From assembly GCA_053919585.1 (NCBI GenBank), contig CM132802.1: a stretch of DNA of 64,000 nt; one strand, given 5' to 3'. The first letter of the stretch is position 1. Each line of letters starts with the position of its first letter. A program made the position numbers and the translations under genes. Under the pieces are notes generated by a model. That model searched no databases, was not told the DNA's origin, and was given only the letters and a program-made list of their open reading frames with translations. Origin of the DNA: Euprymna scolopes (Eukaryota). Shown one piece after another: positions 1 to 25,421 of this stretch.

Positions 1-1257
1 ATAGTTGCAAAACACTATCCCCGTATGTTACTTACATCTTAATAGTGACGATCACAAAAAACAAAATGAAAGAAACAGAAAGTAAGTAAAAAGGGGGCAC
101 TAGAAAATACGTATGGTATCTAGTAGTAAATGTATACTTTAAACACTCCATAGTTGCTTTAAAGCAGTTAGCCATTCAGTCGCTGTTGTTATATAGTGAA
201 AGGTAAGTGTATAATAATTGAAATGTCGAATTGTCTTTGCGACGACATATTCTAATGCTGTAAATATTCGTTTTCATTTAATTCCGGATTAAGAGAATTT
301 GGGGGCAACGAATAAGACGCAGCAGATTTTCACGAGTGGGGGGGGGGTAATATTTTGTTTATTCTACTACATGAAAGAATATGACATCTCTGTGTGTGTA
401 AAATCTGTTGAACATGTAGACTTCCTGCCGGTGTCGACTGGTTGCTGGGGTTAGGATAAAATATTAAGAAGAAAAATACGAGTCCCTTCCTCTAACGATG
501 TTGCGATGGTATTAGTGTTGCTCCTATGATGCAATGTAGTATTTTATTATAACGTCTGAATGGGTCTAAAGTGATAGTCGAAAGCTCCATGAGATAGTGG
601 CTAATAGCCTAGATATATTAAATTTGTTTGTCGCATTTGCTGTTTCAAATGTGCGTTACTTTTGTTTAAAATGTGGATTTCGGCAGTCATTTTATTATAT
701 AGGATATTACTCGAATAAACTTGTAAAACACATGAAGAACTTCATGTTTTAAAGACAGCTTAACCTTTATGAAATATTTGTTTTTGCATAAACATGTTCT
801 ATGTTCGCAGATTAACGCTGTTGTGGCTTGTAAAACTCTATGGGCAGTTAGACGATTTTAAATCGGGACGAAAATAACGACAATAGAAATAATTCAACCA
901 TTTGTTTACTGCGACAGTCATATTCAATATATGAAAAATAAAGCATACAGTTTATTTACAGATATAGTAAGTCTAAGAAAGTTTCTGATCTGCCAATACA
1001 TATAATTTTCGCAGTGTGGTTTTATTATAAACTTGCCATATTTATCACAAAGGGATCGACATTCACGCTGACTAGCATTGATCGGTTTTCTTTACATAAA
1101 CTCGTATTGATGGCAACAGATGAAGCGTAAGAAATATGGCTTGCTATCTATAATATTAGAACAAGTAATACCTTTTTATTAACAACTGTGAGAAATCTTC
1201 CCATTCATTGCCTGGACGATTTAATCTCTGGACACGAGTTCAACGTAATTAAAGAGC

Positions 1258-1259
<2 letters not shown>

Positions 1260-1323
<64 letters not shown>
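1260..1323. repeat. (TA)n microsatellite, representative of more than 15 such tracts; (TTA)n tracts at ~36281, 37094, 60985 and 61456
   Basis: Seen directly in the sequence. Confidence 0.98.
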
Positions 1324-1326
<3 letters not shown>

Positions 1327-4300
1327 GGAGTTATAAGGAAAATAAAAATAGAACATTTTAAGATCATGCAATTTCAAAGCCAGTTGATCTCTATTAGAGG
1401 AGGAGAAAAAATAGATTAAAAGTTTTTTTTTTAAGATTAGTAGCTTAAGAATGCAATATAGAAATATTTTATGTATATAGCGTTAAGAAGTACGTAAAAA
1501 TCTAGGTAGAAAGTAGATATAAAACATCTCTAATATTATATAGAACTCTAATCTAATAGATCTTGTACTTTCTTACTTGTTTACATAATGTAATAGATTT
1601 ATTATTGGCTTAATGGTTTACATCCNNNNNNNNNNNNNNNNNNNNNNNNNNNNNNNNNNNNNNNNNNNNNNNNNNNNNNNNNNNNNNNNNNNNNNNNNNN
1701 NNNNNNNNNNNNNNNNNNNNNNNNNNNNNNNNNNNNNNNNNNNNNNNNNNNNNNNNNNNNNNNNNNNNNNNNNNNNNNNNNNNNNNNNNNNNNNNNNNNN
1801 NNNNNNNNNNNNNNNNNNNNNNNNNNNNNTGTAAATTTAATTTTTTATTACATTTATTTTTCAGGACTACAAAAATTCTAAATATTCTTTAGCCCCAGAC
1901 TTTTAATGAATAGCTTATATACTCAAAGAAAACGTAGTAAACAAATTTTTAGGCTACGATTTTTGCTTATTTTCACATAAATCTAAAACTTAAATTGTTA
2001 AATTAAACATATTTATATTAAGGCCAAGAAGATACCGAACGGAATAGACTAAAGTGATATATAAAAAGAAGTACATGCACAATTACGGACGATTATTAGA
2101 AGAAACAATGAGAAAGAAGAAGACCCAGTGAATATATGTGTATGATATAATTGTCAATAAAATATAATCCGAAAATATGTAAGGCAAACTTCAATGCAAA
2201 GTAACATCTTCCAATTTGCTATGAAAATTGAACGAATAACAATGAAAATTTAATATTACACCACGATGTCAACAATACCGTACAGTTTCGTCGGCAGACA
2301 GAATATTACAAATTTTGTAAATTTGTTTCTCTTGTTGAACAAATAATGTGGTTGTGTATTTTAATTTTAATGATTCAAATCCAATATCACATGGTGTTAT
2401 TGTTTATTCTCGAATACTGATGGTTTTCATAGGGTTGGGTTTTTTTATAAAAAAACTAATGGTAATATTTTATATTTAATAATAGTGACGGTTATATTTA
2501 ATGGTAATATTTAATGGTAATATTTATACTTGCTTTAACTGTACGGAATTCTTCTTCTGTTCATTATACTAATTAAAAAGAATGGACATAATTTCAAACA
2601 TAATCATTTTGACGACTTATGTTGTATAAGCAATTCTAGGCTCATACTTCAGGCACTATAAAACTTTCAATATTTGAACTTTCCCCTCACGACTTCATGC
2701 TAACAACTGATTTATACTATGGACTGAAAAATGTTCGATATAGTGTTTGGTGAGCTGTCCTGAAAATAATGAAAACAATTTACTACCTTAATAAACATTA
2801 ATTTTCTTTGCCGACCGAAGGTCTTAAGTTAATATTCCGTTTTATTATTGTTTGTTTTCTTTAACTTAAATAAATGTACTGTGTTTCCAACTCACAAAGA
2901 CAAGGACATACAATACATTTGAATTACATCTGGGGCCAAATAAAATGTCCTGCATACTTTAACACATCGCAAATAAAAGACAAAAAATTCGTCCTCAATT
3001 TCTGAAAAAGATTACATGAATTTCAGTCGGACCAGAATGAAAATCATTTTCCAATCCGGGTATGATTATTGTTTTCAAGGTAATAAATTATACAAACCTA
3101 ACACAAAACAAACATATCATTACATTAAAACAAACTTCCTGGCTCTATAGTAACCCTTGTCGTTGCGTAGATTAACCTGTGTCAATTACAAGAATAACTT
3201 ATTAAATTATTTACAAAGTAATCAATGAAATGAATCTTCGCTCCTGATCGTAAAAATGCATTTACATGACAGGCAACGAGACATTTCTCATATATTGGAC
3301 GTTATTTGCGCCATACCCCTGTTTTTTTTCCTTAGTAAATCGTCAGTATTTTTTATTTTTATTTAATTTTTTTTCAAACCTCTGCTTTTTACAGTACAAT
3401 ATCATTTTACATAGATTCTTAAATTCCCGTTCTATTTGTTTTAACTCGTTTCTCCCCTCTTTCATTTTTCGCCGGGTTTTTTTCATCGACCTTTATCCCA
3501 TGCCGTATCTGTGTGTCATTTCATTAAAATTGCATCATTGGCGTGACCAGGTAACGAGATTGCAAATGTATATTAAACTTACATTGCTGTTTTATTAACA
3601 AAAGTTTTCAAATGTGCGTGGAATAAAGACTATCTATAAAAACGTATTCATCATAATGGTTAATGCCCATACTTAGCGTATTCGGTGTATATCCAGTATT
3701 CAATAAATAATGTGTGATGTATCTATTGCGGTCTGGATAAATAAGCACAAAATGTAACTCGTTAAATATGCTTGTAATCTAAAACAGTGTTGTTGTTTCT
3801 TTCGTGCGTGCGCGTGTGCTCAACACGTTTTTTTACATATCTTTGTCTGCGTGGCACACATACAAATGCGCACACTTTATTTTATAGTGCTTTCGAATCT
3901 GGTTGTTGGCATCTGCGCTTTAAATGCTGTAAAATAGGATATATTAATCTAAAGAGCACGATGACATCTCTGGTTATATTGTTTTATAACTCTATTTTCT
4001 GTTATCTATATGTTTGTTCCTAGTGTTGGAATTTTTGCAACTTCTCTCTAAATTTCTATCACTAAAAAAATCGTTTTTTTTACATTTCCCGGCACGCAGG
4101 AGAACATTTCTCCGTAGCTAATCTTTTCGCTTGGTCTTCGATCTGAAAATCATTTGATATAACAAAAATTCCGTTTCTATTTTATACATTTTTATGAAAA
4201 ACGGAAAATCCGTTAACCTTTTTTGTACATGAATCAACACTGTTTAATGTAAATATTCAAACGTTCCAAAATAAATTCCAAAGTCCCTTATTGATCTTAA

Positions 4301-4667: not shown

Positions 4668-5251
4668 ATTGCAACGTCTTGTCAGACGAGTGCCACTCCC
4701 TCAAACACTTAAATCCATGAGCACAAAAATGACTTTTTTTTAGTCCTATCGGTGAATTTACACGCTGAAGCAAGCCTGACACTAAAGAAGGTCATTGAGA
4801 TCAATTATTACATGCTTCCACGCGTAACAACTTTTCCATCGCCACAGGATCATGTTAATAGACAAATGTTGAAATCCAGCAGCAAGCGAAAGCAAGATAG
4901 CCAGCAACAAGTTAAACTGCAGACCAGCTTAATGCGGGTACTGGTCTCCCGCTTTATTTTTTTATCAATCAGAGATTAGCTTCTCGTAGAAAGTTTACCT
5001 ACATCACGGCTTACTGGAGCCATCCCCACCCCAACACATGCATACATGCACACAAACACACACGGCGCTACTTGGTCGTTGACCCGGAGAAGGGGTGCAT
5101 TCGTCCTTTGGAAGGTCTTGTTGTAAATCCTTCAGAGCCACTAGCCACCCTTCTCACCTAACAAGTCTTGTGAGGGAACCAGTTTAGTCGCCAGTGACCC
5201 GATCCTGAGGCAGGTAGTACTGGGTTGCATGGTACCATTAGCATAGATATA

Positions 5252-5503
5252 CACTGCGTGTAAAAAAATTAACGACATAACAATTTTTTACGAGTTTCAG
5301 AAACTTTACAGTAGTTTCGTGACAAAAGCTTTGGAAAAATTGGCAATGCTGAGCTACGCGTACTGTGAAATTTTCGTACTGTTCCGCGCAGTGTAAACAA
5401 CTTGCAATCGTAATTGCTTAATCCACGGTATTTGAGCTGTGTCAATTTATTAACAAGCCAGTTGGCTTCGTCAATAACATGGGTCGCAAAGGTGGGTTGA
5501 GTA
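5252..5503 (+). mobile_element. 5' end of a Tc1-family DNA transposon (TRT/DD37E-like): terminus and first codons of the transposase
   Basis: TA followed by CACTGCGTG terminus at 5252. ATG at 5479 gives MGRKGGLS, which continues as SSEK..ITEQVAKDKTVLEISKMIG at 12909 once the 5504-12908 insert is removed. Confidence 0.7.
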
Positions 5504-5531
5504 TCTAGAAGTGTAAGCCATGTTTAGTTTA

Positions 5532-5659
5532 AGAACAGTTTCAGATGGTTCGTTGTTCTAAACAAGTTTTGAGAGGTGACTGGTTTGCAGTAGACAGAAC
5601 AGTTTCCGATTGTTCGTTGTTACACACAAGTCCTGAGAGGTGACTTGTTTGCAGTAGAC
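5532..5659. repeat. Tandem duplication, 2 x ~64 bp
   Basis: agaacagtttc(a/c)gat(g/t)gttcgttgtt...gagaggtgact(g/t)gtttgcagtagac occurs twice head to tail. Confidence 0.9.
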
Positions 5660-5761
5660 AGTTCCACAGAGCAAAATATTCTTAGCGTGTCGAGACGGAA
5701 AAAAAAAGCATGTGAAATTGCTACAGAAAAGGTTTAATATTTATGGAGCAATTGTGGTTTC

Positions 5762-5828
5762 TGATTGGTTGGTAGCAGAACGTGAATTAATTCGATTCGT
5801 CAGTACCTAGCAGCACCGTTTATAAATA
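5762..5828 (+). promoter_or_regulatory. Candidate Pol II promoter (inverted CCAAT box plus TATA box)
   Basis: TGATTGG at ~5762 and TATAAATA at 5821-5828. The expected start site (~5851) coincides with the first copy of the repeat boundary motif. Confidence 0.4.
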
Positions 5829-5851
5829 GAATCGTCCGACTGTGTGGAATA

Positions 5852-6230
5852 ATACCCTCATCACTTCGCCTGATAAGTAAGGTCTCCTAGCGGCTTCGGC
5901 TGAAGGGAGACAGGGTAGTACAAGTCAAGGATTCGTCACTTGACACTCAGCCCAACAGGTGAGGGGACGGGAAATGGCACAACACCTGTTGGACTGATTT
6001 ACGCCGCCTGAATAATACCTAGCAGGTCCACCCTCCCAGGCCTTGCCACCGGGCTTTCCGGTGCGGCAAGTTTATTGGCTGCTGCCTGAGACGCCCTGAC
6101 CGGGGAATGCAGACGGAATTACTCAGCCAATTTTTAAAATTGCAGGAGTGACCCTTTTTAGGGGAGCCTGCGTGGTTCCCACTTTCCGGCCTTGTGCCAG
6201 ATAATGCTGATGTGGGCAGTATTTAAATAT
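5852..6230 (+). repeat. Structured ~360-380 bp unit, copy 1 (candidate SINE-like element)
   Basis: GC-rich unit repeated three times with serial hairpins GTCTCC/GGAGAC (cUUCGg loop), GTCAAG/CTTGAC, CCAACAGGTG/CACCTGTTGG and CTTGCCACCGG/CCGGTGCGGCAAG. Confidence 0.9.
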
Positions 6231-6577
6231 ATACCCCATTACTTCGTCTGATGGGGAAGGTCTCCTAGCGGCTTCGACTGCAGGGAGACAGGGTAGTACA
6301 CGTCAAGGATTCGTCACTTGACACTCAACCTAACAGGTGAGGGGACGGGAACCGGCCCAGCACCTGTTGGACTGAGGTACGCCGCCTGGCTAATACCTAG
6401 GAAATCCACCCTCCTAGGCCTTGCCACCGGGCTTTCCGGTGGGGCAAGTTTATTGTTTGCTGCCTGAGGCGCCTCGACCGGGGAATGCCGACGGGGCACC
6501 TCTTTTAAGGAAGACTGCGGGTTCCCACTTTCCGTCCTTGTGCCACATATTGCTGATGTGGGTAGCAATTAAATATA
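6231..6577 (+). repeat. Structured unit, copy 2 (about 30 bp internal deletion)
   Basis: Aligns by eye to copies 1 and 3; begins ATACCCCATTACTTCGTCTGATGGGG. Confidence 0.9.
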
Positions 6578-6966
6578 TATCCCATTACTCTGTCTGATGG
6601 GGAAGGTCTCCTAGCGGCTTGTGCTGCAGGGAGACAGGGTAGTGCACGTCAAGTATTCGTCACTTGACACTCAGCCCAACAGGTGAGGAGCCGGGAACCG
6701 GCCCAGCACCTGTTGCACTGAGGTACGCCGCCTGGGTAATACCTAGGAGGTCCACCCTCCTAGGCCTTACCACCGGGCTTTCGGGTGCCTTGCAAGTTTA
6801 TTGCTTGCTGCCTGAGGCGCCCCGACCGGGGAATACCGACGAGGTTGCCCAGGCATTTTTTTAAATTGCAGGAGTGCACCTTCGTTGGGGGAGCCTGCAG
6901 GGTCCCAATTTCCGGCCTTGTGCCACATATTGCTGATGTGGACAGCAATTAAATATATACCCCATT
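6578..6966 (+). repeat. Structured unit, copy 3
   Basis: Aligns by eye to copies 1 and 2; ends AAATATATACCCCATT directly before the Tx1 body. Confidence 0.9.
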
Positions 6967-7140
6967 ACCCCGCAGTATTTTGACTTGTGCGGCGCGTTAT
7001 TTTGTAAGCGATTTTTCTCCTTTCTGTCCTTTTCCTTTTACTTTTATCAACGCCGGTTTTTTTTTTCTACGCGACGCTTTTTTCCTGCTTTTCTTCTTTT
7101 TTTTTACTTTTCGCTTAACCGTTTTTTAAACGGTTCGGCT

Positions 7141-8712
7141 ATGGCCGTTTCTGCGAGCCAGACGCCCATTATTATCGATACGATGGTGTCGGAAAACGTC
7201 ACACCTTCTATGCCTAACATCTGTTCTAAACCCCCCAAAATAGACATCAATGTCAAAGACTTCGTTGAAAAGGCAAAACAATGCCTGGAGCTCGTCATCG
7301 ATACAGGTTTGATTGTCAACTTACCAAGGTTGGAAGAAATCCGAAAAAAGTGTCTTACACTATTTGTAGTGGACCGAAAAACAAAAAAGGTACTAACAGC
7401 AAGTACAGACATCGTCATCAACCTTTTGGCTTCAGCAGGATTTAGACCCTTACGAATTGTAAAGTGTAAGGGTTATAATAAATGTAGTGTGCTTCTCAAT
7501 TCACCAGCAGAATGCATAACCATTTCACAAAAAGAAATAATTACACCACAATATATTTTAAGAACTAAATATATGGGGAAACGTCAGACTCCATTGTTCA
7601 TGTTCCACACCACATCGAAGGAGAACATCTCGGCACCTTCTTCCTACAATTCGGCGAAATGGCATCGGTACCAGTAGACGAGTTCTAGTGTATCATCCTT
7701 CGTCATCCTCCTTGATAAGGAAAATTTTGTAAACCTTTCTTACTTCCTTGAGGTAGGAAAAGAAAAAAACTTCACATAATAGTTGCTGGTTGAAGACCAA
7801 CTTGTTGGAATTGCAGCGAGATTAGGCACCTTACGTCTTAGTGCCCCATGAAGAAACCTCAATCAAACCCAAAAAGACTCACCGGACAACACTTGGGAAG
7901 CACAACTTCTACAAGCGTTCTCAAGCCTCCCACCGAAGAAACAACCAACAACCCAGACGAAATCCTCAGAGGAGAACCCTGCCAGATCACCCCTGGGAAA
8001 ACACCCCGGACGCCTGAGCCTCGATCAGATGAAAGAACACACCATGCTAATAAACGAGCCTAGAAAGGAAAATACATCGAAATTGTTAACTTAAAAAAGA
8101 AACTGGACACTCAACGGCAATCACCATAATCCCCATGTAAACCCCCTTCTCCGAAAACAAGCCTCAAGCTTATAATCAACCGTATCACTAAGTCTTCTAC
8201 AAAGTCCAAAATTCCCTCCCCTTACAGAATGCCTCCAGTCACAAACCCCGTCCCTACCAAATTCCCAAATTGATACCCCTAAGCCCCCTTAAAAACATAA
8301 ATCCTCCTCTCCTGTTCCAGCCACCTCTGAGTCCCCTCACAATACTCATCCTGCATCCCCTACTAAGATCACTGCCGACACACATACTGATACGGACATA
8401 GACAAAAAAACAGCAAACAAGAAAAATACCCTCTACCTCCCTGGAAAAAGACATATATATCCTTAACTCAGCAGCTATTCATAACAACAAAAACTTTAAA
8501 GGTACCGACCTCACCAAACTAATTGAGTTTAAGGAGGTAGGGGGAAGCTAATAGGAATCCCCACCAATTTCTCCAAGGCTAAAAGAATACTTACAGTCAT
8601 TCGAAAACGCGAAGAGGCTACGGATTTGATGCAAATGCTGGAAGAGGCAAATATGACCTTCAATATTTTCCCTCCCCTAGCTGTTTTTAAAGACACATAC
8701 ATCAAAAACTAA
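7141..8712 (+). pseudogene. LINE ORF1 (gag-like, with zinc knuckle), disrupted
   Basis: Open frame from MAVSASQTP. CX2CX4HX4C knuckle (PTCWNCSEIRHLTS*CP) at ~7797-7850, then a Pro/Lys/Thr-rich region with stops and frameshifts. Confidence 0.7.
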
Positions 8713-8916
8713 AAAAAAGGTTGTGTTGGGAGGGTCCCGGTAAAAATGCACCACTCACTGTATAGAATAGCAAAACTGACCTATTCTTTGCATGTCGGCA
8801 GTATCTCTCGTGATGGGCTCATCGGTACTGCGATGGGTACCTATTCCCTGACGGGAGCTGTCGGCACGCTCATGACCGCGATGTTCGTTTCTGATTCTCA
8901 ACCCTAAGGCACAATC

Positions 8917-11900
8917 ATGTATCTCAAGCTTGCTAGTGTGAATGTCCGAGGGCTAAGGGCCGACTTGCGAAAGTGGCGATTGAGGTGTTTCCTGGCTAGT
9001 TAAAAGGTCCCTAGATGCGTCGTGTGACCCGTGCTACATGGATCCCGAGAGACGACTACGTGTTTTGGATGTTACCATAAAGGCAGGGCATTTCGTCTTA
9101 TTGGGGTCCATGCGCCCAATAGCCACGTTTAGCTGGCTGCCTTTTATCGACGAATCGAGCAGTTCATGGATACTTTTCGAACGGTTATCTTAGCGGGAGA
9201 CTGGAACGCGGTCCTGGATCCCAATTTAGATCGATCTTGGTTACCTTCTAGGGGAACTAACAGAAATCGGGATGCTGTTTTATTTCGTGAATTTGTGGAT
9301 AAATTTGACCTTATCGACACATTCCGAAATGAAAAGCCCCGTGACTTAGTGTGGACTTGGATAGTTAGACGCAGCTCCGGTCCAGTACAGCTCTCGATCT
9401 ATATCTACCGGTTCTTAGGAGAGTCGGTGTAGGAGTATTGAATTGCCCAAGTTTCCACAATATAGTTTACTCGGATCACAGACTTGTTCGTGTACGGATA
9501 AACTTAGATAGATATAAGCCTTGATTAGCCGGTGACTGGAAGCTCAACACGTCGTTATTCGATGTGAAGGGCTTCAGTGAAGGGCTATTACTAACCCTTC
9601 AGCGGGGATTGACGGGGGCAATTATTGGGAATAAGTGGTAGGTAAAAATTAAGGAAGCAATTAGGTCCTTTTCTGCCAACTTTAGCTAAAGACTCAACCT
9701 AGATTCTAGGGCAGCTAAAGCGACACTAGAGTCTAGATTAGATCGGGCGGTAGAGAAAAGGGATAGTGCTAGCGTTAATTTAATTAAGGCTCATATTGTC
9801 TCCCTTACTGAAAAGGAGCACCAAGATTTTAGTGATTAGGGCTAGGTTAAAAAGAATGCTCCAGGAAGCAACAAACATGGCCGCTGAACTGCGTGCAGAG
9901 GAGCTTCGGCAAGCGGCTGATAAGCACATCGCTCGTATCACATTGCTGGACGGGCGTGCCGTGACCACAGACCAGGGTGTGCTGGAGGCGTTTAGTTCTC
10001 ATTTCCAGGAGCTTTTTTTCATGGAACCCAGTCTGTCATTAGAACAGTTCGACACCTACTTGGCTGACTTTTCTCGTCTTTCGACGACCGAATCGGTTAG
10101 GTGCGAAGGTGGCATAACGGAGGATGAAATCATTGAAGCCTTAAAGCAGGTTGGCCTTAATAAGTCACAGGGGATCGATGGTCTTCCCTACGAAGTGTAT
10201 TTGAGGTTGTCGCACATCTTTGCCCCTTTGCTGACGGTTTTTTTTAACTGATGGTTTAGGAACGTCTCGATCATCAAGTACTTTTTCATGGGTGTGATAA
10301 AGCTTGTTCGTAAAACCAACGATGGTGGGGATGGGTTAGGTAATTTCAGGCCCTTAACGATGCTTAATTCAGTTAAAGATTTTGGCTAAGATTATCGCTA
10401 ATCGTCTGCAGATTGTCCTGGCTCGTCTTACTAACCCCGAGCAAACGTGCACCGTGAAGGGCAGGATAATCCAGGATAATTTGCACACGATACGCCTGAT
10501 GATAGGAAAAGGCGACACTAAGACCGCGCTCATCAATTTAGATCAGTCCAAAGCCTTCGATAGGGTTGACCATCAGTACTTGAGGGCTGTTTTGTTGGCG
10601 GCCGGTTTTGGCCTGCAATATTGCTCGTGGGTTCATCTTCTCTATGCTAACCCCGCAGTGATGGTAGACGTGAATGGGGAGAGGTCGAGGCCCTTCAGTT
10701 TGTCACGATCAATTCGTCAAGGGTGCCCATTATCACCCATGCTATACGTGCTTGTGATAGAGTAATTTTTGCGTAGGCTAAGGGTGAATCCGGTCCCACG
10801 CGGAATCACTTTGCCAGGTGCGGCTGCCCAGGTAAAGTACTTTGCCTATGCCGACGACGTAACTGTGCTTGTTACGAGCAGTGCTTAGATTAGTGTCGTC
10901 GGTGTAGAAATCAGATTGTATGATACGGTAACAGGCGCAAAAATTAACTGCGACAAGTCTGCGCATCGGTGCCTGGAGGCGTATGCCCCTTCAGGGGCCC
11001 TTTAGTTGAAGTGACGGGCCTTGCAAGATACTCGGCGTCTGGTTTGGTCCTGACCTCCAGCTGGAGAAATATTGGTCGGAGGTTCTGAAAACGGTTAAAT
11101 CCGCAGCTGCGCTGTGGATCAGTAGAAACCTTTTATTAAAGGGGAGAGCGGACGTATGTAATACCCACATCTATCCAATCTTAATTTATTGTCTACCAGT
11201 GTTTCTATCCCCGTCAGATACACTGCTATATTTGTAGAGGGCTCTTTTCAACTTTTATGGCTTGGAAGGCCCCCTATGTTCAGTCGCGATGTCTGCTATC
11301 TACATCCTTCTGAAGGCGGTCTAAGTATGGCAAACGTCGAGATTCGGCTCCACACACTACGGCTCTACTAACTAGATCGAATGTGCACACAAGACAAAGA
11401 AGACGGTGGCCTCCGGATGCAGGACACCAAGAAAGCCTTTCCGGCTTTCAGAGGGCTGCACCAGTCCGAGGGGGAGGCGCACAGGTTTCCCCCAGGTTAT
11501 TGCCCCTTCTACCGCGACTACCGGCGCGCGCTGAAGTTTCTCTTCAGAGTTAAGGAAAGCCTCTTCAACTCTCTGCTATTTGCCCGAAAGGCATTATATC
11601 GGGTGTTATTAAGGGGGTCGGTAAGGGATGTTATTGGTAAGGGGTCCCCGTTTGATGAAGGGGCAGCTTCGCTCAATCTGGCCTTGGGGTCCTTGGTCGG
11701 GATGCCTCACTAACGACGAGGCATCCTTGACCTGGCTGGAAATTCGAGATGCTCTCTGTGTCGGTAAGAGACTTAACTCAGCTGGCTTGGCGGTTTCACC
11801 TATTTTTAAACGGTGCGGCGATGAGCGCGAGACTTTATGTCACGCCTTCGTCTATTGTCGCATAGTGGTGCCGCTGATTGAGTCTGTTACAGGTCTCATG

Positions 11901-12225
11901 GTCATATCGTCGTTAATCTTGGTTCCTATCAATGTATGTAGCAATTGGGCTCCGACAACGGATAGGCTTAGAAAAGAATTGTGTGTTGACCTTGCTAGCA
12001 GTGATGAGAGGTCTTATCTGGAACACACGCATGGGAGTGGTCTACGGACCTGAGGACTTCGCTCCCCTCGACCTTATACGAATCTTCCGTTATCATTGGA
12101 AGAGTCGTATCAAGGCCGAGAGAGTTCGACTCTCTTGATCAGATTTTGTTGAAATGCGACTGTCAGTTGCGCGTGTGGGTCGGGTGAGAGAAGCAAGTCT
12201 TGACTGGTTCTTGGGTGTTCCTTAG
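8917..12225 (+). pseudogene. LINE ORF2: APE endonuclease, reverse transcriptase and C-terminal zinc finger (Tx1-like), disrupted
   Basis: Motifs MYLKLASVNVRGLR, LAGDWN, YSDH, WKLN, GIDGLPYE, LINLDQSKAFDRVDH, RQGCPLSP, YADD (~10846) and KRCGDERETLCHAFVYC. Confidence 0.92.
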
Positions 12226-12908
12226 GGAAATAATTTTGGGTAGCAGAAACGAACGTCAGCTCTGACTCGTTTTAAGTCCAGGGTAGGTCACGATTTAGGC
12301 AATAGTAGGACCATTTTTAGGCTCTTGTGTTCATAACCTAACGAGTGTGTGATAGAGATCGTTAGGCCATGTTAAGTTTGTCCCGTTTTTTTTGTTTAGC
12401 ACCATCCCCTTCCCCAAATTAGCTGACAGATCGCTTGATTCGCCAGAGATTCGAGTTCCCTTTCGAAGTTTTCGTAAGATGTGTTTAAATAAAGCGTTCG
12501 GACCCGCATCAACTTTTCGACTGGCCAATCAGCGCACCTGCCACAGTTTAGCAACAGTTTAGAGCGGTCTTTTTTTACTAACATTGTAAATACGTCATTT
12601 AATATTTGTATTATAAAATATTTATATCCCAAACCCTCATTTTTTCTTATGGGTTTTAATTAGTTTATAATGGTATGATGTTCTTATTGTGACTGACGAA
12701 GGATTTATACGCTGATGGATGTATAGCATAAATGTGGTATTGTGGTGAAAGTAGAGTGACAGTAGGAACTAGTTAGATTAGTTAGCTTTAGACAGAGAAG
12801 ACTGTCCTCCCCCTCCCCCATGTTTGACTTTGTGCCAAATTTTTCTGGAAATTCTATATTTTTTGAAAAAAAATATATACCCCATTCATCGTCCAAAATA
12901 TTACAACA

Positions 12909-12986
12909 GAGTAGTTCAGAAAAATAATATTACAGAACAGGTAGCAAAAGATAAAACTGTCCTCGAAATATCGAAAATGATAGGAC
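12909..12986 (+). mobile_element. Middle fragment of the Tc1/TRT transposase (HTH region)
   Basis: SSEK..ITEQVAKDKTVLEISKMIG links MGRKGGL (5479) to HQTLKRLF (~13677). Confidence 0.65.
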
Positions 12987-13668
12987 CTTTTACTCCTGGT
13001 CTTAAATTGAACACTTACTTACTAAATCTGTGTCCAAGACCGCTGGAAAAATGATGGGATCCTTCTATCGATGCAGTATATATCTCACTGATGATGCAAT
13101 TCTCTATTATATAAGAGCCAGGAACGACCAAGGATGGAATATTGTTGCCACATCTGGGCAGGAGCTGCTAGAAAGGATTTGTTCTGCCTTGATAGAGTTC
13201 AAAATAGACTGCATAGTCTCGTAGAAGATATCCTTTTCTCTTCTTTGCAACCTCTATCTCGCAGAAGAGATGTTGCGAGTTTGTCTCTGCTGCATCATTA
13301 TTTTCATGGAAAGTGTTCGACTGGTCCTCACTAGCCAAACTCGCCTAGTTGAAAACACTATCAATAATTCCCCCACTCGTGATCTGTGCCTAAACCTAAA
13401 CGTAGATTCCATGAACAAAGCTTATTTCTTTGAACTGCACGCCCGTGGAATTGTCTTCCGTTTTCCTGCCTTCCAACTGACTACAATATGGTTGTCTTGA
13501 AGTCTAACGTAAACAAGTTCTTGATGAGCCGTCGCACTTATTCACAAATTTACCGAATGTCCATTACTAACAATTTATATATTGTTAAATTTCTGCTGTA
13601 CACTCTAAAACCCTTATCCTTGAGTGCCCTCTTGACCTTGATAGGTGGTGATGCCTACGTAAAAAAAG
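12987..13668 (+). mobile_element. 5'-truncated CR1-group LINE inserted in the Tc1 transposase
   Basis: MEYCCHIWAGA and LQPLSRRRDVASL motifs; similar to 49640-50345; 3' stem-loop followed by an A-run. Confidence 0.88.
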
Positions 13669-14641
13669 AAAGGTACCATCAAACTTTAAAGAGATTGTTC
13701 AAGAGTACGTAAAAGAACTGATAAAGGTAAATCTGAAGTTGTTTCACGCCGTTCTCTACTCCAAGATAAACGTGAAGTTTATAAGGACTATGGACAGACA
13801 AGTCGATAAGTCTTTAAGCGAGCCGGATATAAGAATGTCTCAAAAAGTACTCGATGTCGCTTTCTGAAAGAACTGGCAACGTCTGTGACAAAACCTGCAT
13901 TAAAGCAACATCACGTACAAAACCAATTGAAATACGCAGAGGACAACATTAAACCGGAGTTTTCCAAAGTTTTGTTCATGGATAAAGTGTGTGTCACTCT
14001 TGATGGATCACATGGCAGGAGCAAAAGAAGGGGTCCTAGATGGACGACATCATCATCAGCGTTTAAAGCGGCAATGTGGTGGTTGGATAATGATTTGGGT
14101 TGTTATTATCGGAGGTATTTTACTTGGCCCATGTAAAGTCCCAGACAGCGTAAATATGACATCAAATGCTTTTCTGAAGGAGCGCTTTGGACCAGGGTCG
14201 AGGAGCAAGGGTTTACATTCAAGAGAAACATTATTTTTTATGCAGAATAATGCTCCCTCACAGACAGAAAACAAAAGCAAAGCGTATTTCCAACAGCTGA
14301 GGTCCTCTGGGCTACGGAAGAGAGCGGTCTGCGAATTCACCAGAGTTGAACCTTATTGAGAACCTTCAGAGTACAATGAAGCGACACCTCTATGAAAGTG
14401 GACGCCAATTTAAGAGCATAGATGAGTTGTGGGTGCTCTACAAGAGGTATCGCAAGGAATAACTGTTGACGAAATCAAAAATTTGACTAATTTTGTGGAC
14501 CAATATCTTTTACAAGTCATTCATAACAAAGGATCGCACATGCCCTACCAATTAAGTCAACGTTGAAATTGCTATGTAGTTATTGTGTTCAAAGCATTTT
14601 TCTTGTTTATTTAATGTTTGAAAAGTATTAGACTCTCTCTA
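13669..14641 (+). mobile_element. Tc1-family (TRT/DD37E-like) transposase remnant, catalytic part
   Basis: FSKVLFMDKVCVTLDGSHG, GGWIMIW, FMQNNAPS and SPELNLIEN motifs; runs into an N gap. Confidence 0.85.
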
Positions 14642-18394: not shown

Positions 18395-21300
18395 TTTTTT
18401 TTTTTTCATTACATTTTCACCCCAAACAAGGCACATTGCCACTTTAATGTAGGGGGCTACTATCAGGGGAAACATCTACTGGGGTACTGTGTAGGGATTA
18501 GGGCAGCGAGATGTTGGTTCACGTTGCACTTGAACTTATGCATGTCAGTACAGTTGGGGAAGCAGTGACCTGGAATGGAATTCCAAAGTCTAGCAGTTCT
18601 GGGGAAGAAACTACTGGAGTAGAAAGATCTTTTACATCTAGGGATCTCTACAGTGTCGGGGTGGGATTTTGTAGCTTGTCGGGTCTGTCGTGTTCCCGTC
18701 GTGGGGGCACAAGTGCTTGCAGTTCTTCCGAGCATTCACCATTATAATACTTGTAGAACAGGCAGAGGGATGCAACGTTTCGACGATGGGGCAGTGGCTG
18801 AAGTTTTGATGCCAGTTTAGGGCCTATCAGATTTGCGACTGTCTTTTGAACCCTGTCAAGGAGCGAGAGACTAGTAGCCGATGCACCGGCCCAAATATGA
18901 CAGCAATACTCCATACATGGGCGAATAGTGGCCTTATAGAGGTACAGGATACTTTCAGGTGTTAGAAGTTTTCTAGCACGGTAGAGAGAGCCCACCTTCC
19001 TCGCAGCGGCCCTGGCAATGCCCTCGATGTAATTGTTCCAGCTCATGTTTCCTGTGAACGTTAGGCCAAGGAGCTTGAAAGACGTACTCTCAACTAAAGA
19101 GTTGTTGGCCATTGCTAGAGGTGGTAGAGAAGGTTTCTTGTAATTATTGAATGAAACCAGTTTTGTCTTGGTGGCATTGAACGTTACCATCCATTTTTGT
19201 CCCCATTCCACTACTGATTTGAGGTCATCCTCTAGTGTTTCTGCCATTACTTTAGATATATGTTCATTTGTTTTCCTGTCGTGCCTGCTATAGAGTGTGG
19301 TGTCATCAGCATATATACCCATCTCAGAGGCAATTTTGTCGGGGAGGTCATTTATGAATATCAGGAACAGCAGAGGACCAAGGATAGATCCCTGGGGCAC
19401 TCCCGCATTTATATTATATTGTTTAGACGTACGACCGTCGAGGACAACCTGGATTTTTCTCTTATCTAAGAAGGATTTAATTATGTTAAGTATTCTACCA
19501 GTGATACCGTAAGATCTAATCTTCCTGAGGAGACCCTCATGCCATACCCTGTCAAAAGCCTTAGATATATCTAGAGCTACCGCTCTGCCATCTCCCGCTT
19601 TGTCCAGTGAATGGTATATGCGTTCAGAGATTACAGTGAGGATGTCTGCCGTGGAACGGGCTTGTCTAAATCCATATTGATGGTCGGTCAGAAGTTTAGC
19701 ATCTGTAAGGTGCTGGACTAGAGCATGGTTAATTAAGGTCTCAAATATTTTGGCAAAAAGTGGGAGGAGGCTAATAGGGCGATAATTTAATGGGTCAGTT
19801 CTTTCGCCAGAATTCTTGAATACTGGTACCACAGAAGCAGTTTTCCAACAGCTCGGAAAGCAAGATTCATTAAGGCATTTGTTGTAGAGTTTGGAGAGAA
19901 CTGGAGCTACTTCGGCTGAGCACTTTTTTAATAGCACAGCTGGGATGAGGTCGGGTCCAAATGCTTTGGAAGTGTCAAGGTTTTTTATGATAGCATGCAC
20001 CTGAGCAGGGGTGATTTTTAGATCGTCTAGCGTGGCGTCTGTCCTCATAGGAAAGTCAGGTAGGGGGTGGTTTAGAGGGTCCAGTGTAGAGTTGGAGGCA
20101 AACCGACTGGCAAGCATGTTAGCCTTCTCGGTTGCTGAGCAAAGAACCTCGTGATTGTTGGTTGGTGGGGGAATTGTTGATTGCCCATTATTTACTACAC
20201 TGTTGTAGATTTTCCAGAAGTCACGAGTTCCTAATTTTTGTGCTTCGATGCGTTTTTTAGTGGTTTCCGTAAATTCCCTCTTAGCTGTCGCTATTTATTT
20301 CTTAACGTTACTTCTAGCTTCTATGTACTTTTGTCTGTTTGAACTGGACTTATGTCGGTTAAACCTGCGGAATGCATGCTGCCTTTGAGCAATGGCAGTT
20401 GCGCAAGTCGAAGAAAACCATTGGGGAGAGTGGGGCTTGCTATAGAATTTCCACATGGGAACATACGCTTCGATTGCAGTTTTGAACCATTCAGTGGTCT
20501 CGGTTGCACACTGTTCAGCAGGAAGATAAAAAAATATTTCCCCATGGGGCGTCTCTGATAAGATCTCTGATAGCTTCCCAGTCAGCCTTTTTATAATATC
20601 TCGTTGTTTTGAGCACTGGCTCTTCAGTTTTGGGTCTGGAGTTTAGGGCGATTTCAACCATTATTACCGCATGATCAGCGTTCCCAAGTGGGCTGTCGGC
20701 TTTCGTTACACAATCATCAGGAACTGTGGTCAAACACAGATCTAATAGTGATGCGTGTTGCTCTTCCTGATCAGGGAAGCGGGTTGGGAAAGTAACAATT
20801 TGCGATAGGGAGTGAGATACAGAGAAGCTATGAGTTGCGCTGCCTGCTGCATCTATATAAGTAGAGAATCCAAGCCAGTTTTTGTGATGGACATTAAAGT
20901 CACCAAATACATGTACTTGGGCGCTAGTGTCGAAGGAGAGTGGTGTGTCTATGCTGTCAGATACTTTGTTTATTTTGGTGCAGTCTTGGGTCGAGGGAGA
21001 GCGGTAGAGAAAGTAAAAGTAGCTAATGTTGTGTTGCATGATTAGTCTAAAGCACATAAAGGCTTGATCATCCGTTTCTAGGTTTGTTTCTCTAGTCAAG
21101 GGAAGGGTATTACGAATGTAAACTCCAAGTCCGTGCATATGTCTGTCAGAGTCCTTACGGCAGAGTGGGAGATATCCAGGCATGTGAAAGTAGTTAGAGG
21201 GGATGGAGGAGTGTAGGTTAGTCTCACTTAGTGCTAAGATATCCGGGGTATTTGTTAGGAGAAATGCTTCAACATCAGCTAAATTAGTTCTAAGCCCACG

Positions 21301-22158
21301 GATATTTGTGAATGCAAGCCTCAAGGGAGGAGGCAAGTTGGATTTGTTTGTCCCTAAGCCTGGTTTAAGTTTATTTTTAGATTGTACTGTCATCATGTTT
21401 TTTAACGAGTTTCAGTTGGGTTTGGGGAAGCCGAACAGGAGGTTATGCGGAATATCACACATGCATCACAAGTAGACCATCAGCTGACCCTCCATCAACT
21501 AGGACTGTGGCCTCAGGAAAGCCCACCGGGGATGAGTGCAGGGTCCCTTTCCATGCGCGCCATGGCACTGCAAACATCCCGATATTATTCAACTGTTGAT
21601 GGAGCAACCGCTCTAAGCGCTACCAAAGAGTTAGGGCTCCTGTACTACCAGTCGGAAACAGCAGCCAGTAACTGTCAATCCGGTACCCTCAACCCATCAG
21701 AGGAAGGTCAACATAATCTAATTGCTCAGGCATATGTGGTACTCGAGCATTCTCAAGTGTCCAGCTTAAGGAGTGGGGTGTGTCGGGAGTGGGGGAAACG
21801 GCGTTCATTGCCCTAGACAAGAAACGAGATCTACCAATGGGTGTTTCTGTCGAATCACTGTGATAGTATCTCTGCGCCTGACTAATAGGCAAAGAAGGAG
21901 TATGGAAGCCGGGCGATAGGCAGGACCTATCTACTCCTTAAGCAATTTAGGTATTGCAAACCGGTAATTTGTTTGAGTTACCAGCTCTAGGAAGGTTGTC
22001 ATCCAAGACTGAAGAGGCCTCCCTCCTCTCTGGTTTAGTTTCAGAGTTTTCCTTCTCCTAGACGGATGATCTGGAAAGATCCACTGGGTCCGTCACCACT
22101 GAGAGGGTTTGCTCCGCGCCTGGGTTCTAATCCAGGTATTTCTGCGACCCCGCGTGGT
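18395..22158 (-). mobile_element. Near-intact single-ORF CR1-group LINE with a long structured 5' UTR
   Basis: APE+RT ORF, poly(A) tail at 18395-18406, and a ~760-bp GC-richer leader. The 5' boundary is approximate. Confidence 0.9.
18463..21396 (-). pseudogene. APE endonuclease-reverse transcriptase ORF with three lesions
   Basis: FTNIRGL, LSETNL, GDFNVHH, NYRPISLL, GVPQGSILGP, YADD and IRPCMEYCCHIW motifs. Frameshift near 20525, TAA at ~20294-20296, frameshift near 18685. Confidence 0.93.
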
Positions 22159-24324: not shown

Positions 24325-25421
24325 TTTAGTAATTATTTTAAAGCAGTACTTAATAGAACTCAGTTATTAATTTTAAAGCAGTACTTAATAGGATTCAATT
24401 AATTATATAAAGTACTGCTTAATAGAATTCAGTTATAATTTTAAAACAGTACTTAATAGAACTGAGTTAGCTATTTTAAAGCAGTGCTTAATAGAACTCA
24501 GTTATTAATTTTAAAGCAGTACTTAATAGGATTCAATTAATTATATAAAGTACTGCTTAATAGAATTCAGTTATAATTTTAAAACAGTACTTAATAGAAC
24601 TGAGTTATTAATTTTAAAGTAGTACTAACACGGATTCAGTTATTAATTTTAAAGTCGTACTTAATAGGATTCAGTTATTTATTTTTAAAGCAGTACTTAA
24701 TAGTACTGTTATTAATTTTAAAGCAATATTTAATAGAACTAATATTAGTTTTAAACCAGTACTTAATAGAACTGTTATTAATTTTAAAGCAGTAGTCAAT
24801 AGAACTCAGTTATTAATTTTAAAGCGGTACTCAATAGAACTCAGTTATTAATTTTAAAGCAGTAGTTAATAGAAATGTTATTACATTCGTTGGTGGGTTG
24901 GTTGTTTTTTTACGGCATATCAACCTTTTTTCTGGTTATTTAATGCCGAATCCAATTTTTAAATAGAATATAGTTGTTGTTTTCAAGTCGGTTTCTATTG
25001 CACCCATAGTTTAGGCCCTTACAGGTACTGCCACTCCGGGTCAGAGTGGACCTGGGAGCAATGACAATTAAAGGGTGTTTCTACACTTCTCAAAGCCCGC
25101 AAGTTGGGGCCTCGGTACTGGACATAGTTTAAGTTCATATCTATGATCAGTTATTAATTTTAAAACAGTACTTAATAGAACTGTTATTAATTTTAAAGCA
25201 GGATTTAATAGAATTCTGTTATTAATTTTAAAGCAACACTCAATAGAACTCAGTTATTAACTTTAAAGCAGGACTTAATAGCACTGTTATTACTTTTAAA
25301 GCAGTACTTAATAGAACTGCTAGTAATTTTAAAGCAGTGCTTAATAGAATTCAGTTATTTATTTTAAAGCAGTACTTAATAGAATTCAATTATTAATTCT
25401 AAGTCAGTATGCAATAGAACT
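24325..25421. repeat. Minisatellite with a ~33-35 bp unit (TTATTAATTTTAAAGCAGTACTTAATAGAACTCAG), split by a SINE
   Basis: More than 20 imperfect copies at 24325-24882 and 25147-25421. Confidence 0.95.
24890..25146 (-). mobile_element. 5'-truncated SINE-like element with (AACC)n tail
   Basis: Closely similar to 32865-33135 (ACAGGTACT.CCACTCCGGGTCAGAGTGGACCTGGGAGCAATG). Confidence 0.8.

What the first reader, a model, noticed from the sequence alone, without database searches (positions are those of the whole stretch)
5852..6966. The 360-bp unit is a dense multi-hairpin RNA of unknown class
Seen: almost every segment pairs. Stems are CCCCAT/ATGGGG, GTCTCC/GGAGAC with inner GCGGC-UUCG-GCTG, GTCAAG/CTTGAC, CCAACAGGTG/CACCTGTTGG with inner GCCGG/CCGGC, CCTAGGAGG/CCTCCTAGG, CTTGCCACCGG/CCGGTG.GGCAAG, GCAGG/CCTGC and CCCAC/GTGGG. 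The first hairpin pairs the duplicated target motif (CCCCAT) with element sequence (ATGGGG), suggesting the RNA folds with co-transcribed target sequence. It has no coding signal and is GC-rich in an AT-rich genome. Inference: it may be a self-cleaving or processing element that releases monomers from read-through transcripts, or an IRES-like or RT-binding scaffold.
Basis: partly seen in the sequence, partly recalled or inferred. Interest (0 to 1): 0.75.

Follow-up and report, generated by a model that had tools for sequence, protein, structure and literature searches.

The report
Hairpin-rich short partner of a LINE
The 360-base unit really is packed with hairpins, but it is most likely a short, non-coding jumping element that uses the neighbouring LINE's enzymes and has piled up three times in one landing site; this kind is already known, and nothing shows that it cuts itself.

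Summary
Observation confirmed. Three tandem GC-rich units (5859-6236, 6237-6582, 6583-6962) fold far better than dinucleotide shuffles (z -2.2 to -6.7 on the + strand, -3.8 to -7.9 on the - strand). Neighbouring controls fold at z of about 0 to -1.6. There is no Rfam match.

It is not a free-standing RNA gene. Every junction carries the motif ATACCCCATTAC(T): flank/u1, u1/u2, u2/u3, u3/LINE and LINE/flank. RNA reads from other copies show that the two outer flanks are halves of one very abundant transcribed repeat (E), which holds this motif natively about 31 bp after a TATA box.

- The units and the L1/Tx1-type LINE (6969-12876) both end in AAATAT before the motif and share a weak 31-nt tail block (p about 0.002-0.016).
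- The unit is about 100-1000 times more abundant in DNA than the LINE's 5' part.

Best reading: a SINE-like, Tx1-dependent, target-specific retroposon stacked by successive insertions, as described for crocodilian SINEU-3/Tx1 (PMC4494074).

The window's copies are decaying. Stem changes mostly break pairs, and the family's majority letters restore them. No cleavage ends, circular joints or ribozyme motifs were seen.

The scan noted the same kind of unit on other DNA of this genome (s1-295572).

The parts
5504..5851 (+). 5' half of the interrupted host repeat 'E'. It is very abundant and transcribed. It holds an inverted CCAAT at 5764-5768, TATAAATA at 5821-5828 and a 64-bp internal duplication at 5532-5659.
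   Evidence: summed DNA word depth 0.5-0.95 million and RNA depth 100-390. Of the RNA reads, 233 + 219 run on past 5857 into CATTACTCTTCCAAAATATTGCAACA, which is the sequence found after the LINE..
5852..5865 (+). Target motif copy 1 (ATACCC-T-CATCACT, mutated, with one extra T) at the E/u1 junction.
   Evidence: Native E copies read ATACCC|CATTACT here (loose end at 5857).
5859..6236 (+). Unit 1 (378 nt), the most decayed copy.
   Evidence: z -2.2 on +, -4.5 on -.
6231..6242 (+). Target motif copy 2 (ATACCCCATTAC) at the u1/u2 junction, preceded by the unit tail AAATAT.
6237..6582 (+). Unit 2 (346 nt). It lacks a 32-nt block that most family members have.
   Evidence: the loose end at 6496 shows the block in other copies.
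6577..6588 (+). Target motif copy 3 (ATATCCCATTAC) at the u2/u3 junction.
6583..6962 (+). Unit 3 (380 nt), the best-preserved copy (MFE -183 kcal/mol). It has a T7 run at 6856-6862.
6957..6968 (+). Target motif copy 4 (ATACCCCATTAC) at the u3/LINE junction.
6969..12876 (+). Decayed L1/Tx1-type LINE. It has a short pyrimidine-rich leader, an ORF1-like frame at 7141-7674, an APE remnant at about 9133-9429, RT at 10358-10762 and zf-RVT at 11625-12050. Its 3' end reads ...TTGTGCCAAATTTTTCTGG...GAAAAAAAATAT.
   Evidence: (the RT is closest to L1 ORF2p among solved structures).
12877..12888 (+). Target motif copy 5 (ATACCCCATTCA) at the LINE/E junction.
12883..12985 (+). 3' half of host repeat E (CATTCATCGTCCAAAATATTACAACAG...). 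From about 12989 an unrelated CR1-like LINE fragment follows.
   Evidence: 24 of 30 bases match the RNA loose-end consensus at 5857. One search shows the CR1-like similarity to 49641-49974.

Best explanation
The 360-bp unit is a SINE-like, non-autonomous retroposon. It is moved by an L1/Tx1-type, target-specific LINE of the kind that sits beside it.

Both home to one short sequence, ATACCCCATTAC(T). That sequence lies about 31 bp downstream of a TATA box inside a very abundant, transcribed repeat (E). Each landing duplicates the motif and so leaves a usable site. Three units and one LINE therefore piled up head to tail in one E copy.

The dense hairpins belong to the family's founder RNA. They probably serve as the folded body and 3' handle that the LINE's reverse transcriptase complex takes up, or that stabilises the RNA. 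The unit has no visible polymerase III promoter and carries an internal T5-T7 run. It is therefore probably transcribed by polymerase II from the promoter of its host repeat or by read-through.

Shown:
- tandem units with the motif at every junction;
- continuity of the two E halves;
- folding beyond chance;
- abundance of the unit far above that of the LINE;
- decay of the copies.

Inferred:
- retrotransposition by the LINE;
- successive rather than single insertion;
- what the hairpins do.
For: 1. The motif sits at all five junctions, and both kinds of insert end in AAATAT just before it.

2. In one search, 233 + 219 RNA reads from other E copies run from ...ATACCC straight into CATTACTCTTCCAAAATATTGCAACA. 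This matches 12883-12912, just after the LINE, at 24 of 30 bases. The 7-kb composite therefore splits one E copy exactly at a motif that E holds natively.

3. Summed DNA word depth is about 13,000-480,000 for the units and about 200-4,000 for LINE 6971-7600. Other LINE copies are detected at the same threshold (contigs 7, 8, 15, 16). The unit is therefore an independent, far more abundant family.

4. The unit's last 60 nt and the LINE's last 60 nt share a 22-of-31 block. Only 0.15-1.6% of 1,988 background windows score as well.

5. Folding z is -5 to -7 for the better copies, against about 0 for controls.

6. Where the family majority differs from the window's copies, 8 sites restore a broken pair, 3 keep a pair and none breaks one. 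This fits a structured founder with decaying copies.

7. T5 and T7 runs lie inside the unit. There is no tRNA, 5S, 7SL or snRNA match.

8. There is a published precedent in PMC4494074. Tx1-mobilised SINEU-3 inserts target-specifically with a 16-bp TSD; 'tandem insertions sandwiching a TSD' arise by sequential insertion; oligo-T lies inside the element; it has no promoter of its own; and some Tx1 families target LTR elements.

9. Earlier notes of this scan, on other DNA of this genome, describe the same pattern.
Against: - Only three copies could be read directly, and no solo unit with clean flanks was seen. Single insertions bounded by TSDs are therefore inferred, not observed.
- The tail similarity is short and modest. 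A whole-sequence test was not significant.
- The TAT of 'AAATAT' at the LINE end could instead belong to a longer TSD copied from unit 3.
- The three units could have multiplied locally by unequal exchange after one insertion.
- Word depths are sums over contigs, not copy numbers.
- The LINE's Tx1 clade membership was not tested by phylogeny.
- No function of the hairpins was tested. Structure is as strong on the minus strand.
Confidence: 0.6

Rival explanations
1. Target tandem repeat. The 360-bp units would be a satellite-like or transposon-internal tandem repeat, or one inserted unit amplified locally by unequal exchange. This repeat would merely be the landing site of a site-specific Tx1-type LINE, as PTR-1 repeats of Xenopus Tx1D are for Tx1L.
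For: The units are tandem, about 350-380 bp long, and the LINE sits at a fixed point of the unit. Tx1 of Xenopus inserts into the Tx1D transposon. That the Tx1D site lies in about 400-bp tandem PTR-1 repeats is from my own knowledge, not checked here. DNA contigs of other copies also cross unit-unit junctions (record 14).
Against: The array starts and ends in exactly the phase of a motif that the host repeat E holds natively. A satellite spreading by exchange would not be expected to do that. The units share the LINE's terminal AAATAT and a tail block. Sequential stacking is documented for Tx1 partners.
Confidence: 0.17
2. LINE 5' monomers. The units would be promoter monomers of the LINE's own 5' UTR, like the monomers of mouse L1. 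Alternatively, the whole three-unit-plus-LINE composite was copied as one read-through transcript.
For: The units lie directly upstream of the LINE in the same orientation. They are GC-rich and end in an AT-rich TATA-like stretch (AAATATATA), and some carry a CCAAT. The other LINE of the window also has a structured GC-rich leader. The outermost motif copies could be the TSD of a single event.
Against: The unit is about 100-1000 times more abundant than the LINE's first 600 bp at the same likeness threshold. The unit/LINE junction carries the same motif as the E/unit and LINE/E junctions. The TATA-like stretch lies only about 10-20 bp from the LINE's first base, too close for a start site upstream of it.
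Confidence: 0.1
3. Self-processing RNA of a new class. The unit would cut itself, or be cut, out of read-through transcripts at the junction. It would use the pairing of the co-transcribed target motif (CCCCAUUA) with UGAUGGGG, as R2 ribozymes use upstream 28S sequence.
For: The junction hairpin exists. Site-specific elements co-transcribed with their target are known to carry 5' ribozymes, some of which cleave within upstream target sequence (PMC3774820; twister variants in Schistosoma elements, PMC8501958). The unit is far more structured than chance.
Against: No match to any Rfam ribozyme at E up to 10. The loose HDV-like descriptor gave no signal above shuffles. RNA reads show no end pile-ups, no drop in depth at the u1/u2 junction and no back-joints. 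The hairpin is only marginal by itself. The data were polyA-selected and come from decayed copies, so the test is weak.
Confidence: 0.05

Closest known systems
SINEU-3 and its Tx1 ('Tx1-Mar') partner LINEs of crocodilians (Kojima 2015, PMC4494074)
   Same: A non-autonomous short retroposon that depends on a Tx1-type LINE. Both land in one specific sequence inside an abundant transposon. Tandem copies sandwich a TSD through sequential insertion. An oligo-T run inside argues against polymerase III. It has no recognisable promoter of its own and may be transcribed from the flank. Some Tx1 families there target LTR elements.
   Different: SINEU heads derive from U1/U2 snRNA; this unit matches no RNA gene family. 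This unit is longer, GC-rich and hairpin-dense. The host is a cephalopod, and the target is a different repeat at a site about 31 bp after a TATA box.
Xenopus Tx1L inserted in Tx1D (PTR-1 tandem repeats)
   Same: A Tx1-type LINE sits at a fixed site next to tandem units of about 400 bp.
   Different: In Xenopus the repeats are the internal part of a DNA transposon and are only the target. Here the units are bounded by duplicated target motifs inside another repeat and share the LINE's 3' terminus. The details of PTR-1 are from my own knowledge; only the Tx1/Tx1D relation was read.
Mouse L1 5' UTR promoter monomers
   Same: GC-rich tandem units directly upstream of a LINE's first ORF.
   Different: The unit is far more abundant than the LINE's 5' part, and the target motif separates the units from the LINE. 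The comparison with mouse L1 rests on my own knowledge.
R2 5' HDV-like ribozyme and R2-derived non-autonomous SIDEs (PMC3774820, PMC3414825)
   Same: Site-specific elements co-transcribed with the target. The 5' RNA can pair with upstream target sequence. Short non-autonomous derivatives exist.
   Different: No HDV-like fold or any other ribozyme was detected, and there is no evidence of cleavage. The enzyme type differs (APE-type L1/Tx1 here, not the restriction-like R2 type).

Membership tests
Tx1-dependent target-specific SINE-like retroposons (SINEU-type system) | Short, non-coding, multicopy element | tested here: met
   No ORF above 84 aa. Unit length 346-380 bp. Very high summed DNA depth.
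Tx1-dependent target-specific SINE-like retroposons (SINEU-type system) | Same insertion site as a partner LINE, with the target duplicated at the junctions | tested here: met
   ATACCCCATTAC(T) is at all five junctions. The two flanks are halves of one repeat that holds the motif natively.
Tx1-dependent target-specific SINE-like retroposons (SINEU-type system) | 3' tail shared with the partner LINE | tested here: inconclusive
   Both end in AAATAT. A 22-of-31 block has an empirical p of 0.0015-0.016. A whole-sequence local alignment was not significant.
Tx1-dependent target-specific SINE-like retroposons (SINEU-type system) | Solo copies at many loci, each with its own TSD | not testable with these tools
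   No further genomic copies could be fetched. Read laying gives only summaries.
Tx1-dependent target-specific SINE-like retroposons (SINEU-type system) | The partner LINE belongs to the Tx1 clade | tested here: inconclusive
   RVT_1 and zf-RVT domains. The RT is closest to L1 ORF2p among solved structures. No phylogeny with Tx1 references was possible.
SINEU (snRNA-headed SINEs) | 5' head derived from U1 or U2 snRNA | tested here: not met
   No snRNA match, even at E up to 10.
Classical polymerase III SINEs (tRNA, 5S or 7SL heads) | Head with an internal polymerase III promoter and no internal terminator | tested here: not met
   No tRNA. No 5S or 7SL match. T5 at 6131-6135 and T7 at 6856-6862 lie inside the unit.
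Self-cleaving ribozymes (hammerhead, HDV-like, twister, twister-sister, pistol, hatchet, Varkud, hairpin) | Match to the family's sequence and structure core | tested here: not met
   cmscan against Rfam 15 with permissive filters gave no ribozyme family at E up to 10. The loose HDV-like descriptor gave 49 placements against 14-93 in shuffles.
Self-cleaving ribozymes (any, including new) | Discrete RNA ends at a cleavage site, or monomer or circular species | tested here: inconclusive
   PolyA RNA reads show no end pile-ups at the junctions and no back-joints in the units. Small or non-polyadenylated RNA was not sampled, and most copies are decayed.
Conserved structured RNA (selection on structure) | Compensatory base changes across copies | tested here: not met
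   2 of 112 pairs are compensatory, about 27 are broken in one copy, and the covariation term is +5.2. Three decaying paralogues are a weak test.
LINE 5' UTR promoter monomers | Units occur only as part of the LINE, at comparable abundance | tested here: not met
   The units have about 100-1000 times the depth of LINE 6971-7600.

The most novel reading that the evidence does not exclude
The hairpin-dense unit would be more than a passive passenger. In this reading its 5' region (UGAUGGGG), paired with the co-transcribed target motif (CCCCAUUA), forms part of a new kind of self-processing or protein-guided processing module. That module would trim read-through transcripts of the host repeat to unit length, giving a promoter-less, target-specific SINE its exact 5' end, a role so far known only for the ribozymes of R2-type and a few other LINEs.
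Probability: 0.05. Interest if true: 0.75.

Novelty: new member of a known kind. Interest (0 to 1): 0.3.

Why it matters
The finding shows that the target-specific Tx1 LINE plus short partner system, described in crocodilians, also runs in a cephalopod. Here the partner has no RNA-gene head and an unusually tightly folded body. The landing site sits close to a TATA box of another abundant repeat, which could supply the promoter.

That is useful for annotating the many 'unclassified SINE' families of octopus-type genomes. It also bears on the question of how promoter-less retroposons get transcribed.

It does not, on present evidence, add a new class of catalytic or regulatory RNA.

Tried and rejected
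**More copies of the unit**
- A 20-mer scan of metagenome contigs gave three chance loci with no further similarity.
- The viral contig scan gave nothing.
- Word searches with the LINE's ORF1-like frame and with an ORF read from the unit were blank.
- The findings index by sequence was blank.
- The RT piece found 236 fragments. The two best loci (L004, L005, ENA assembly ERZ21867824) hold only related LINEs of about 68% DNA identity, with neither the unit nor E. No covariation set could therefore be built.

**Known RNA families**
- Rfam gathering and permissive scans, and ARAGORN, found nothing.

**Ribozyme**
- A home-made HDV-like descriptor was no better than shuffles.
- No hammerhead core was seen by eye: the CUGAUG stretches lack a helix II and GAAA.

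**Strand**
- Folding energy cannot choose the strand.

**Tail**
- A unit-against-LINE 3' region local alignment with whole-sequence shuffles was not significant. Only the end-anchored 60-nt test was.

**Rejected readings**
- A polymerase III SINE, because of the internal T-runs and the lack of A and B boxes.
- An LTR, because TG...CA ends are lacking and the TATA-like stretch sits at the very end of the unit.
- A Penelope-type tandem, because the LINE has APE, RT and zf-RVT domains and there is no hammerhead.

Full report
**What is there**

Positions 5852-6968 hold three head-to-tail units: u1 5859-6236, u2 6237-6582 and u3 6583-6962. They are 378, 346 and 380 nt long, and mean column identity is 89%. 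u2 lacks a 32-nt block that most family members have.

No other copy lies in the 64-kb window. The stretch is 55% GC in a genome of about 30% GC. It has no ORF longer than 84 aa. Earlier notes of this scan call the genome a cephalopod. The run labels include mollusc and invertebrate metagenomes.

**Is the hairpin density real?**

Yes. u2 folds to -145.7 kcal/mol against -120.7 ± 4.9 for dinucleotide shuffles (z -5.15).

| Stretch | z, + strand | z, - strand |
|---|---|---|
| u1 | -2.2 | -4.5 |
| u2 | -5.15 | -3.76 |
| u3 (-183.0 kcal/mol) | -6.7 | -7.9 |
| Controls (flank repeat, LINE leader, two LINE coding pieces) | +0.3 to -1.6 (both strands) | |

The minus strand folds about as well, so the signal is one of inverted repeats in the DNA. 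It does not by itself say which strand is the RNA.

The junction hairpin CCCCAUUA/UGAUGGGG is real but marginal when taken alone (-10.7 kcal/mol, z -1.8).

**Covariation**

Among the three copies, only 2 pairs changed on both sides and kept pairing. About 27 pairs are broken in one copy, and the covariation term is a penalty of +5.2.

I also took the 23 best-supported sites where nearly all other family members carry a different letter (table 3).
- At 8 sites the majority letter restores a pair that is broken in the window's copy.
- At 3 sites it keeps a pair.
- At no site does it break a pair.
- 12 sites are unpaired in the consensus structure.

The founder was therefore even more tightly folded, and these copies are decaying neutrally. 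This is not evidence of selection on the fold, and three paralogues could not give such evidence.

**Known families**

Rfam 15 gave nothing at gathering thresholds over the whole window. On 5000-7600 at E up to 10 it gave only chance-level miRNA, snoRNA and lncRNA rows. There was no ribozyme, tRNA, 5S, 7SL or snRNA match. ARAGORN found no tRNA.

**Context**

A decayed LINE follows immediately at 6969-12876.
- Short pyrimidine-rich leader.
- ORF1-like frame at 7141-7674.
- Weak APE remnant (Exo_endo_phos, E 0.06).
- RVT_1 (E 6e-17).
- zf-RVT (E 5e-5).

These rest. Among solved structures its RT piece is closest to human L1 ORF2p (E 4.5e-15, against 4.6e-11 for R2). That fits an L1/Tx1-type element. 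The Tx1 clade itself could not be tested by a tree.

The LINE ends ...GAAAAAAAATAT and is followed by ATACCCCATT.

**The junction motif**

The same motif stands at every junction:

| Junction | Sequence |
|---|---|
| flank/u1 | AATAATACCC-T-CATCACT |
| u1/u2 | AAATAT-ATACCCCATTACT |
| u2/u3 | AAATAT-ATATCCCATTACT |
| u3/LINE | AAATAT-ATACCCCATTAC |
| LINE/flank | AAAATAT-ATACCCCATTCA |

These rest.

**The reads**

I laid one DNA run, one probable RNA run (contigs) and two polyA RNA runs (raw reads) on 5501-7600 at 85% likeness. There are three results.

1. The left flank (about 5504-5857) is a hugely abundant, transcribed repeat, which I call E. In other copies 233 + 219 RNA reads run from ...ATACCC straight on into CATTACTCTTCCAAAATATTGCAACA. 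That is the sequence found after the LINE (12883-12912, 24 of 30 identical). The two outer flanks are therefore the halves of one E copy, split exactly at a motif that E holds natively. The motif starts 31 bp after E's TATAAATA (5821-5828). An inverted CCAAT lies about 57 bp further upstream.

2. Summed DNA word depth is 13,000-480,000 over the units but only about 200-4,000 over the LINE's first 600 bp. Other LINE copies are nevertheless detected at this threshold (records 7, 8, 15, 16). Depth is not copy number. Even so, a gap of two to three orders of magnitude excludes the idea that the units exist only as this LINE's 5' monomers.

3. RNA covers the units at a low level in both mate orientations (depth about 5-68). 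There are no begin or end pile-ups at the junctions, no drop at the u1/u2 junction bin and no back-joints inside the units. The LINE is silent.

**Shared 3' end**

Both the units and the LINE end in AAATAT before the motif. E has GGAAT(A/C) there, so these bases belong to the inserts and not to the target.

The last 60 nt of the unit and of the LINE share a 22-of-31 block (CCCA.T.T..G.C.TTGTGCCA.AT.TT.CTG). Only 0.15-0.35% of 1,988 background 60-mers score as well for u2 and u3, and 1.6% for u1. A less focused test against whole-sequence shuffles was not significant. I call the shared tail suggestive, not proven.

**Interpretation**

The simplest account is that the unit is a non-autonomous, SINE-like partner of a target-specific L1/Tx1-type LINE. 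Both land in ATACCCCATTAC(T) within E. Each landing duplicates the motif, so further copies can land beside the first. That yields the stack E-u1-u2-u3-LINE-E.

This is the pattern published for crocodilian SINEU-3 and Tx1 (PMC4494074):
- target-specific insertion into an abundant transposon with a 16-bp TSD;
- 'tandem insertions sandwiching a TSD' made by sequential insertion;
- oligo-T inside the element, which speaks against polymerase III;
- no promoter of its own, with possible transcription from the flank;
- some Tx1 families that target LTR elements.

The unit likewise has T5 and T7 runs inside (6131-6135, 6856-6862) and no polymerase III head. Octopus genomes are reported to hold L1-Tx1 families and hundreds of unclassified SINE families (PMC13282606).

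What the hairpins do is inference. The most likely roles are a compact RNA body, with a 3' handle for the LINE's reverse transcriptase complex, and RNA stability.

**Rivals**

- A tandem repeat that is only the LINE's target, as in Xenopus Tx1D, or local amplification of a single inserted unit. I cannot exclude local amplification. The array's exact phase with E's native motif and the shared terminus argue against a plain satellite.
- LINE promoter monomers, or a single composite insertion. The abundance gap and the motif between u3 and the LINE argue against this.
- A self-processing RNA. Known site-specific elements do use 5' ribozymes, some of which cleave in upstream target sequence (PMC3774820). 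Here, however, no ribozyme family matched. A loose HDV-like descriptor was no better than shuffles (49 placements against 14-93). The reads show no cleavage signature. The read test is weak, because the libraries were polyA-selected and the copies are decayed.

**Relation to earlier notes of this scan**

I had already read the literature precedent and noted the stacked-insertion reading when I found the most relevant note. That note describes a structured unit of about 370 nt on other DNA of this genome. It shares its 3' end with a Tx1 LINE and was read as a site-specific SINE-like partner homing into LTRs (s1-295572).

Two further notes say that Tx1-type LINEs here land about 30-33 bp after TATA boxes of LTR-type repeats and stack in one 16-bp spot (s1-244890, s1-259179). 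These I had seen earlier, before laying the reads.

My window agrees on the spacing (31 bp from the start of the TATA box to the start of the motif) and on the stacking. I could not test whether E is an LTR.

**Limits**

No further genomic copies of the unit could be fetched. TSDs of solo copies, subfamily covariation and the true RNA ends therefore remain untested. The N stretches were left alone.

**Verdict**

The 'unknown RNA class, perhaps self-cleaving' reading is not supported. The unit is a new member of a known kind of mobile element.

Noticed in passing
window 5504-5857 and 12877-12985: Host repeat E. It is extremely abundant (summed DNA depth up to about 0.95 million) and is the most highly transcribed stretch laid. 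It has an inverted CCAAT (5764-5768), TATAAATA (5821-5828) and a 64-bp internal duplication (5532-5659) that most other copies have only once. Whether it is an LTR, as earlier notes suggest for such targets, or a SINE was not settled.
   Followed up: partly
window 12989-13400 and 49641-50082: Two copies (77% identical) of the C-terminal ORF2 part of a CR1/Jockey-like LINE, including the ...LQPLSRRRDVASLSLLHHYFHGKCS motif. The first abuts the 3' half of E.
   Followed up: no
window 18648-21396 (-) and 21397-22158: A second LINE, more intact, with APE and RT domains (RVT_1 E 2e-38). Its GC-rich leader also folds better than shuffles on the sense strand (z -3.9 and -4.4 for its two halves). Structured leaders may therefore be common among LINEs here.
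   Followed up: partly
window 13810-14356: Stop-free frames that by eye resemble a Tc1/mariner transposase remnant. Pfam gave no hit.
   Followed up: no
window 24328-24874 and 25146-25409: Two arrays of an AT-rich 35-bp tandem repeat (about 16 and 8 copies, with a higher-order period of about 138 bp).
   Followed up: no
L004 about 7400-12100 and L005 about 9900-11100 (ENA assembly ERZ21867824): Related L1/Tx1-type LINEs (RT up to 67% identical in protein, about 68% in DNA) in long contigs of another AT-rich eukaryote-like assembly. They have no unit and no E beside them.
   Followed up: partly
window 12856-12876: The LINE's last 21 nt can form a 9-bp A/U hairpin (AUAUUUUUU-GAA-AAAAAAUAU) that includes the terminal UAU. 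This hints that the TAT belongs to the element and not to the target duplication. It is not significant by energy.
   Followed up: partly
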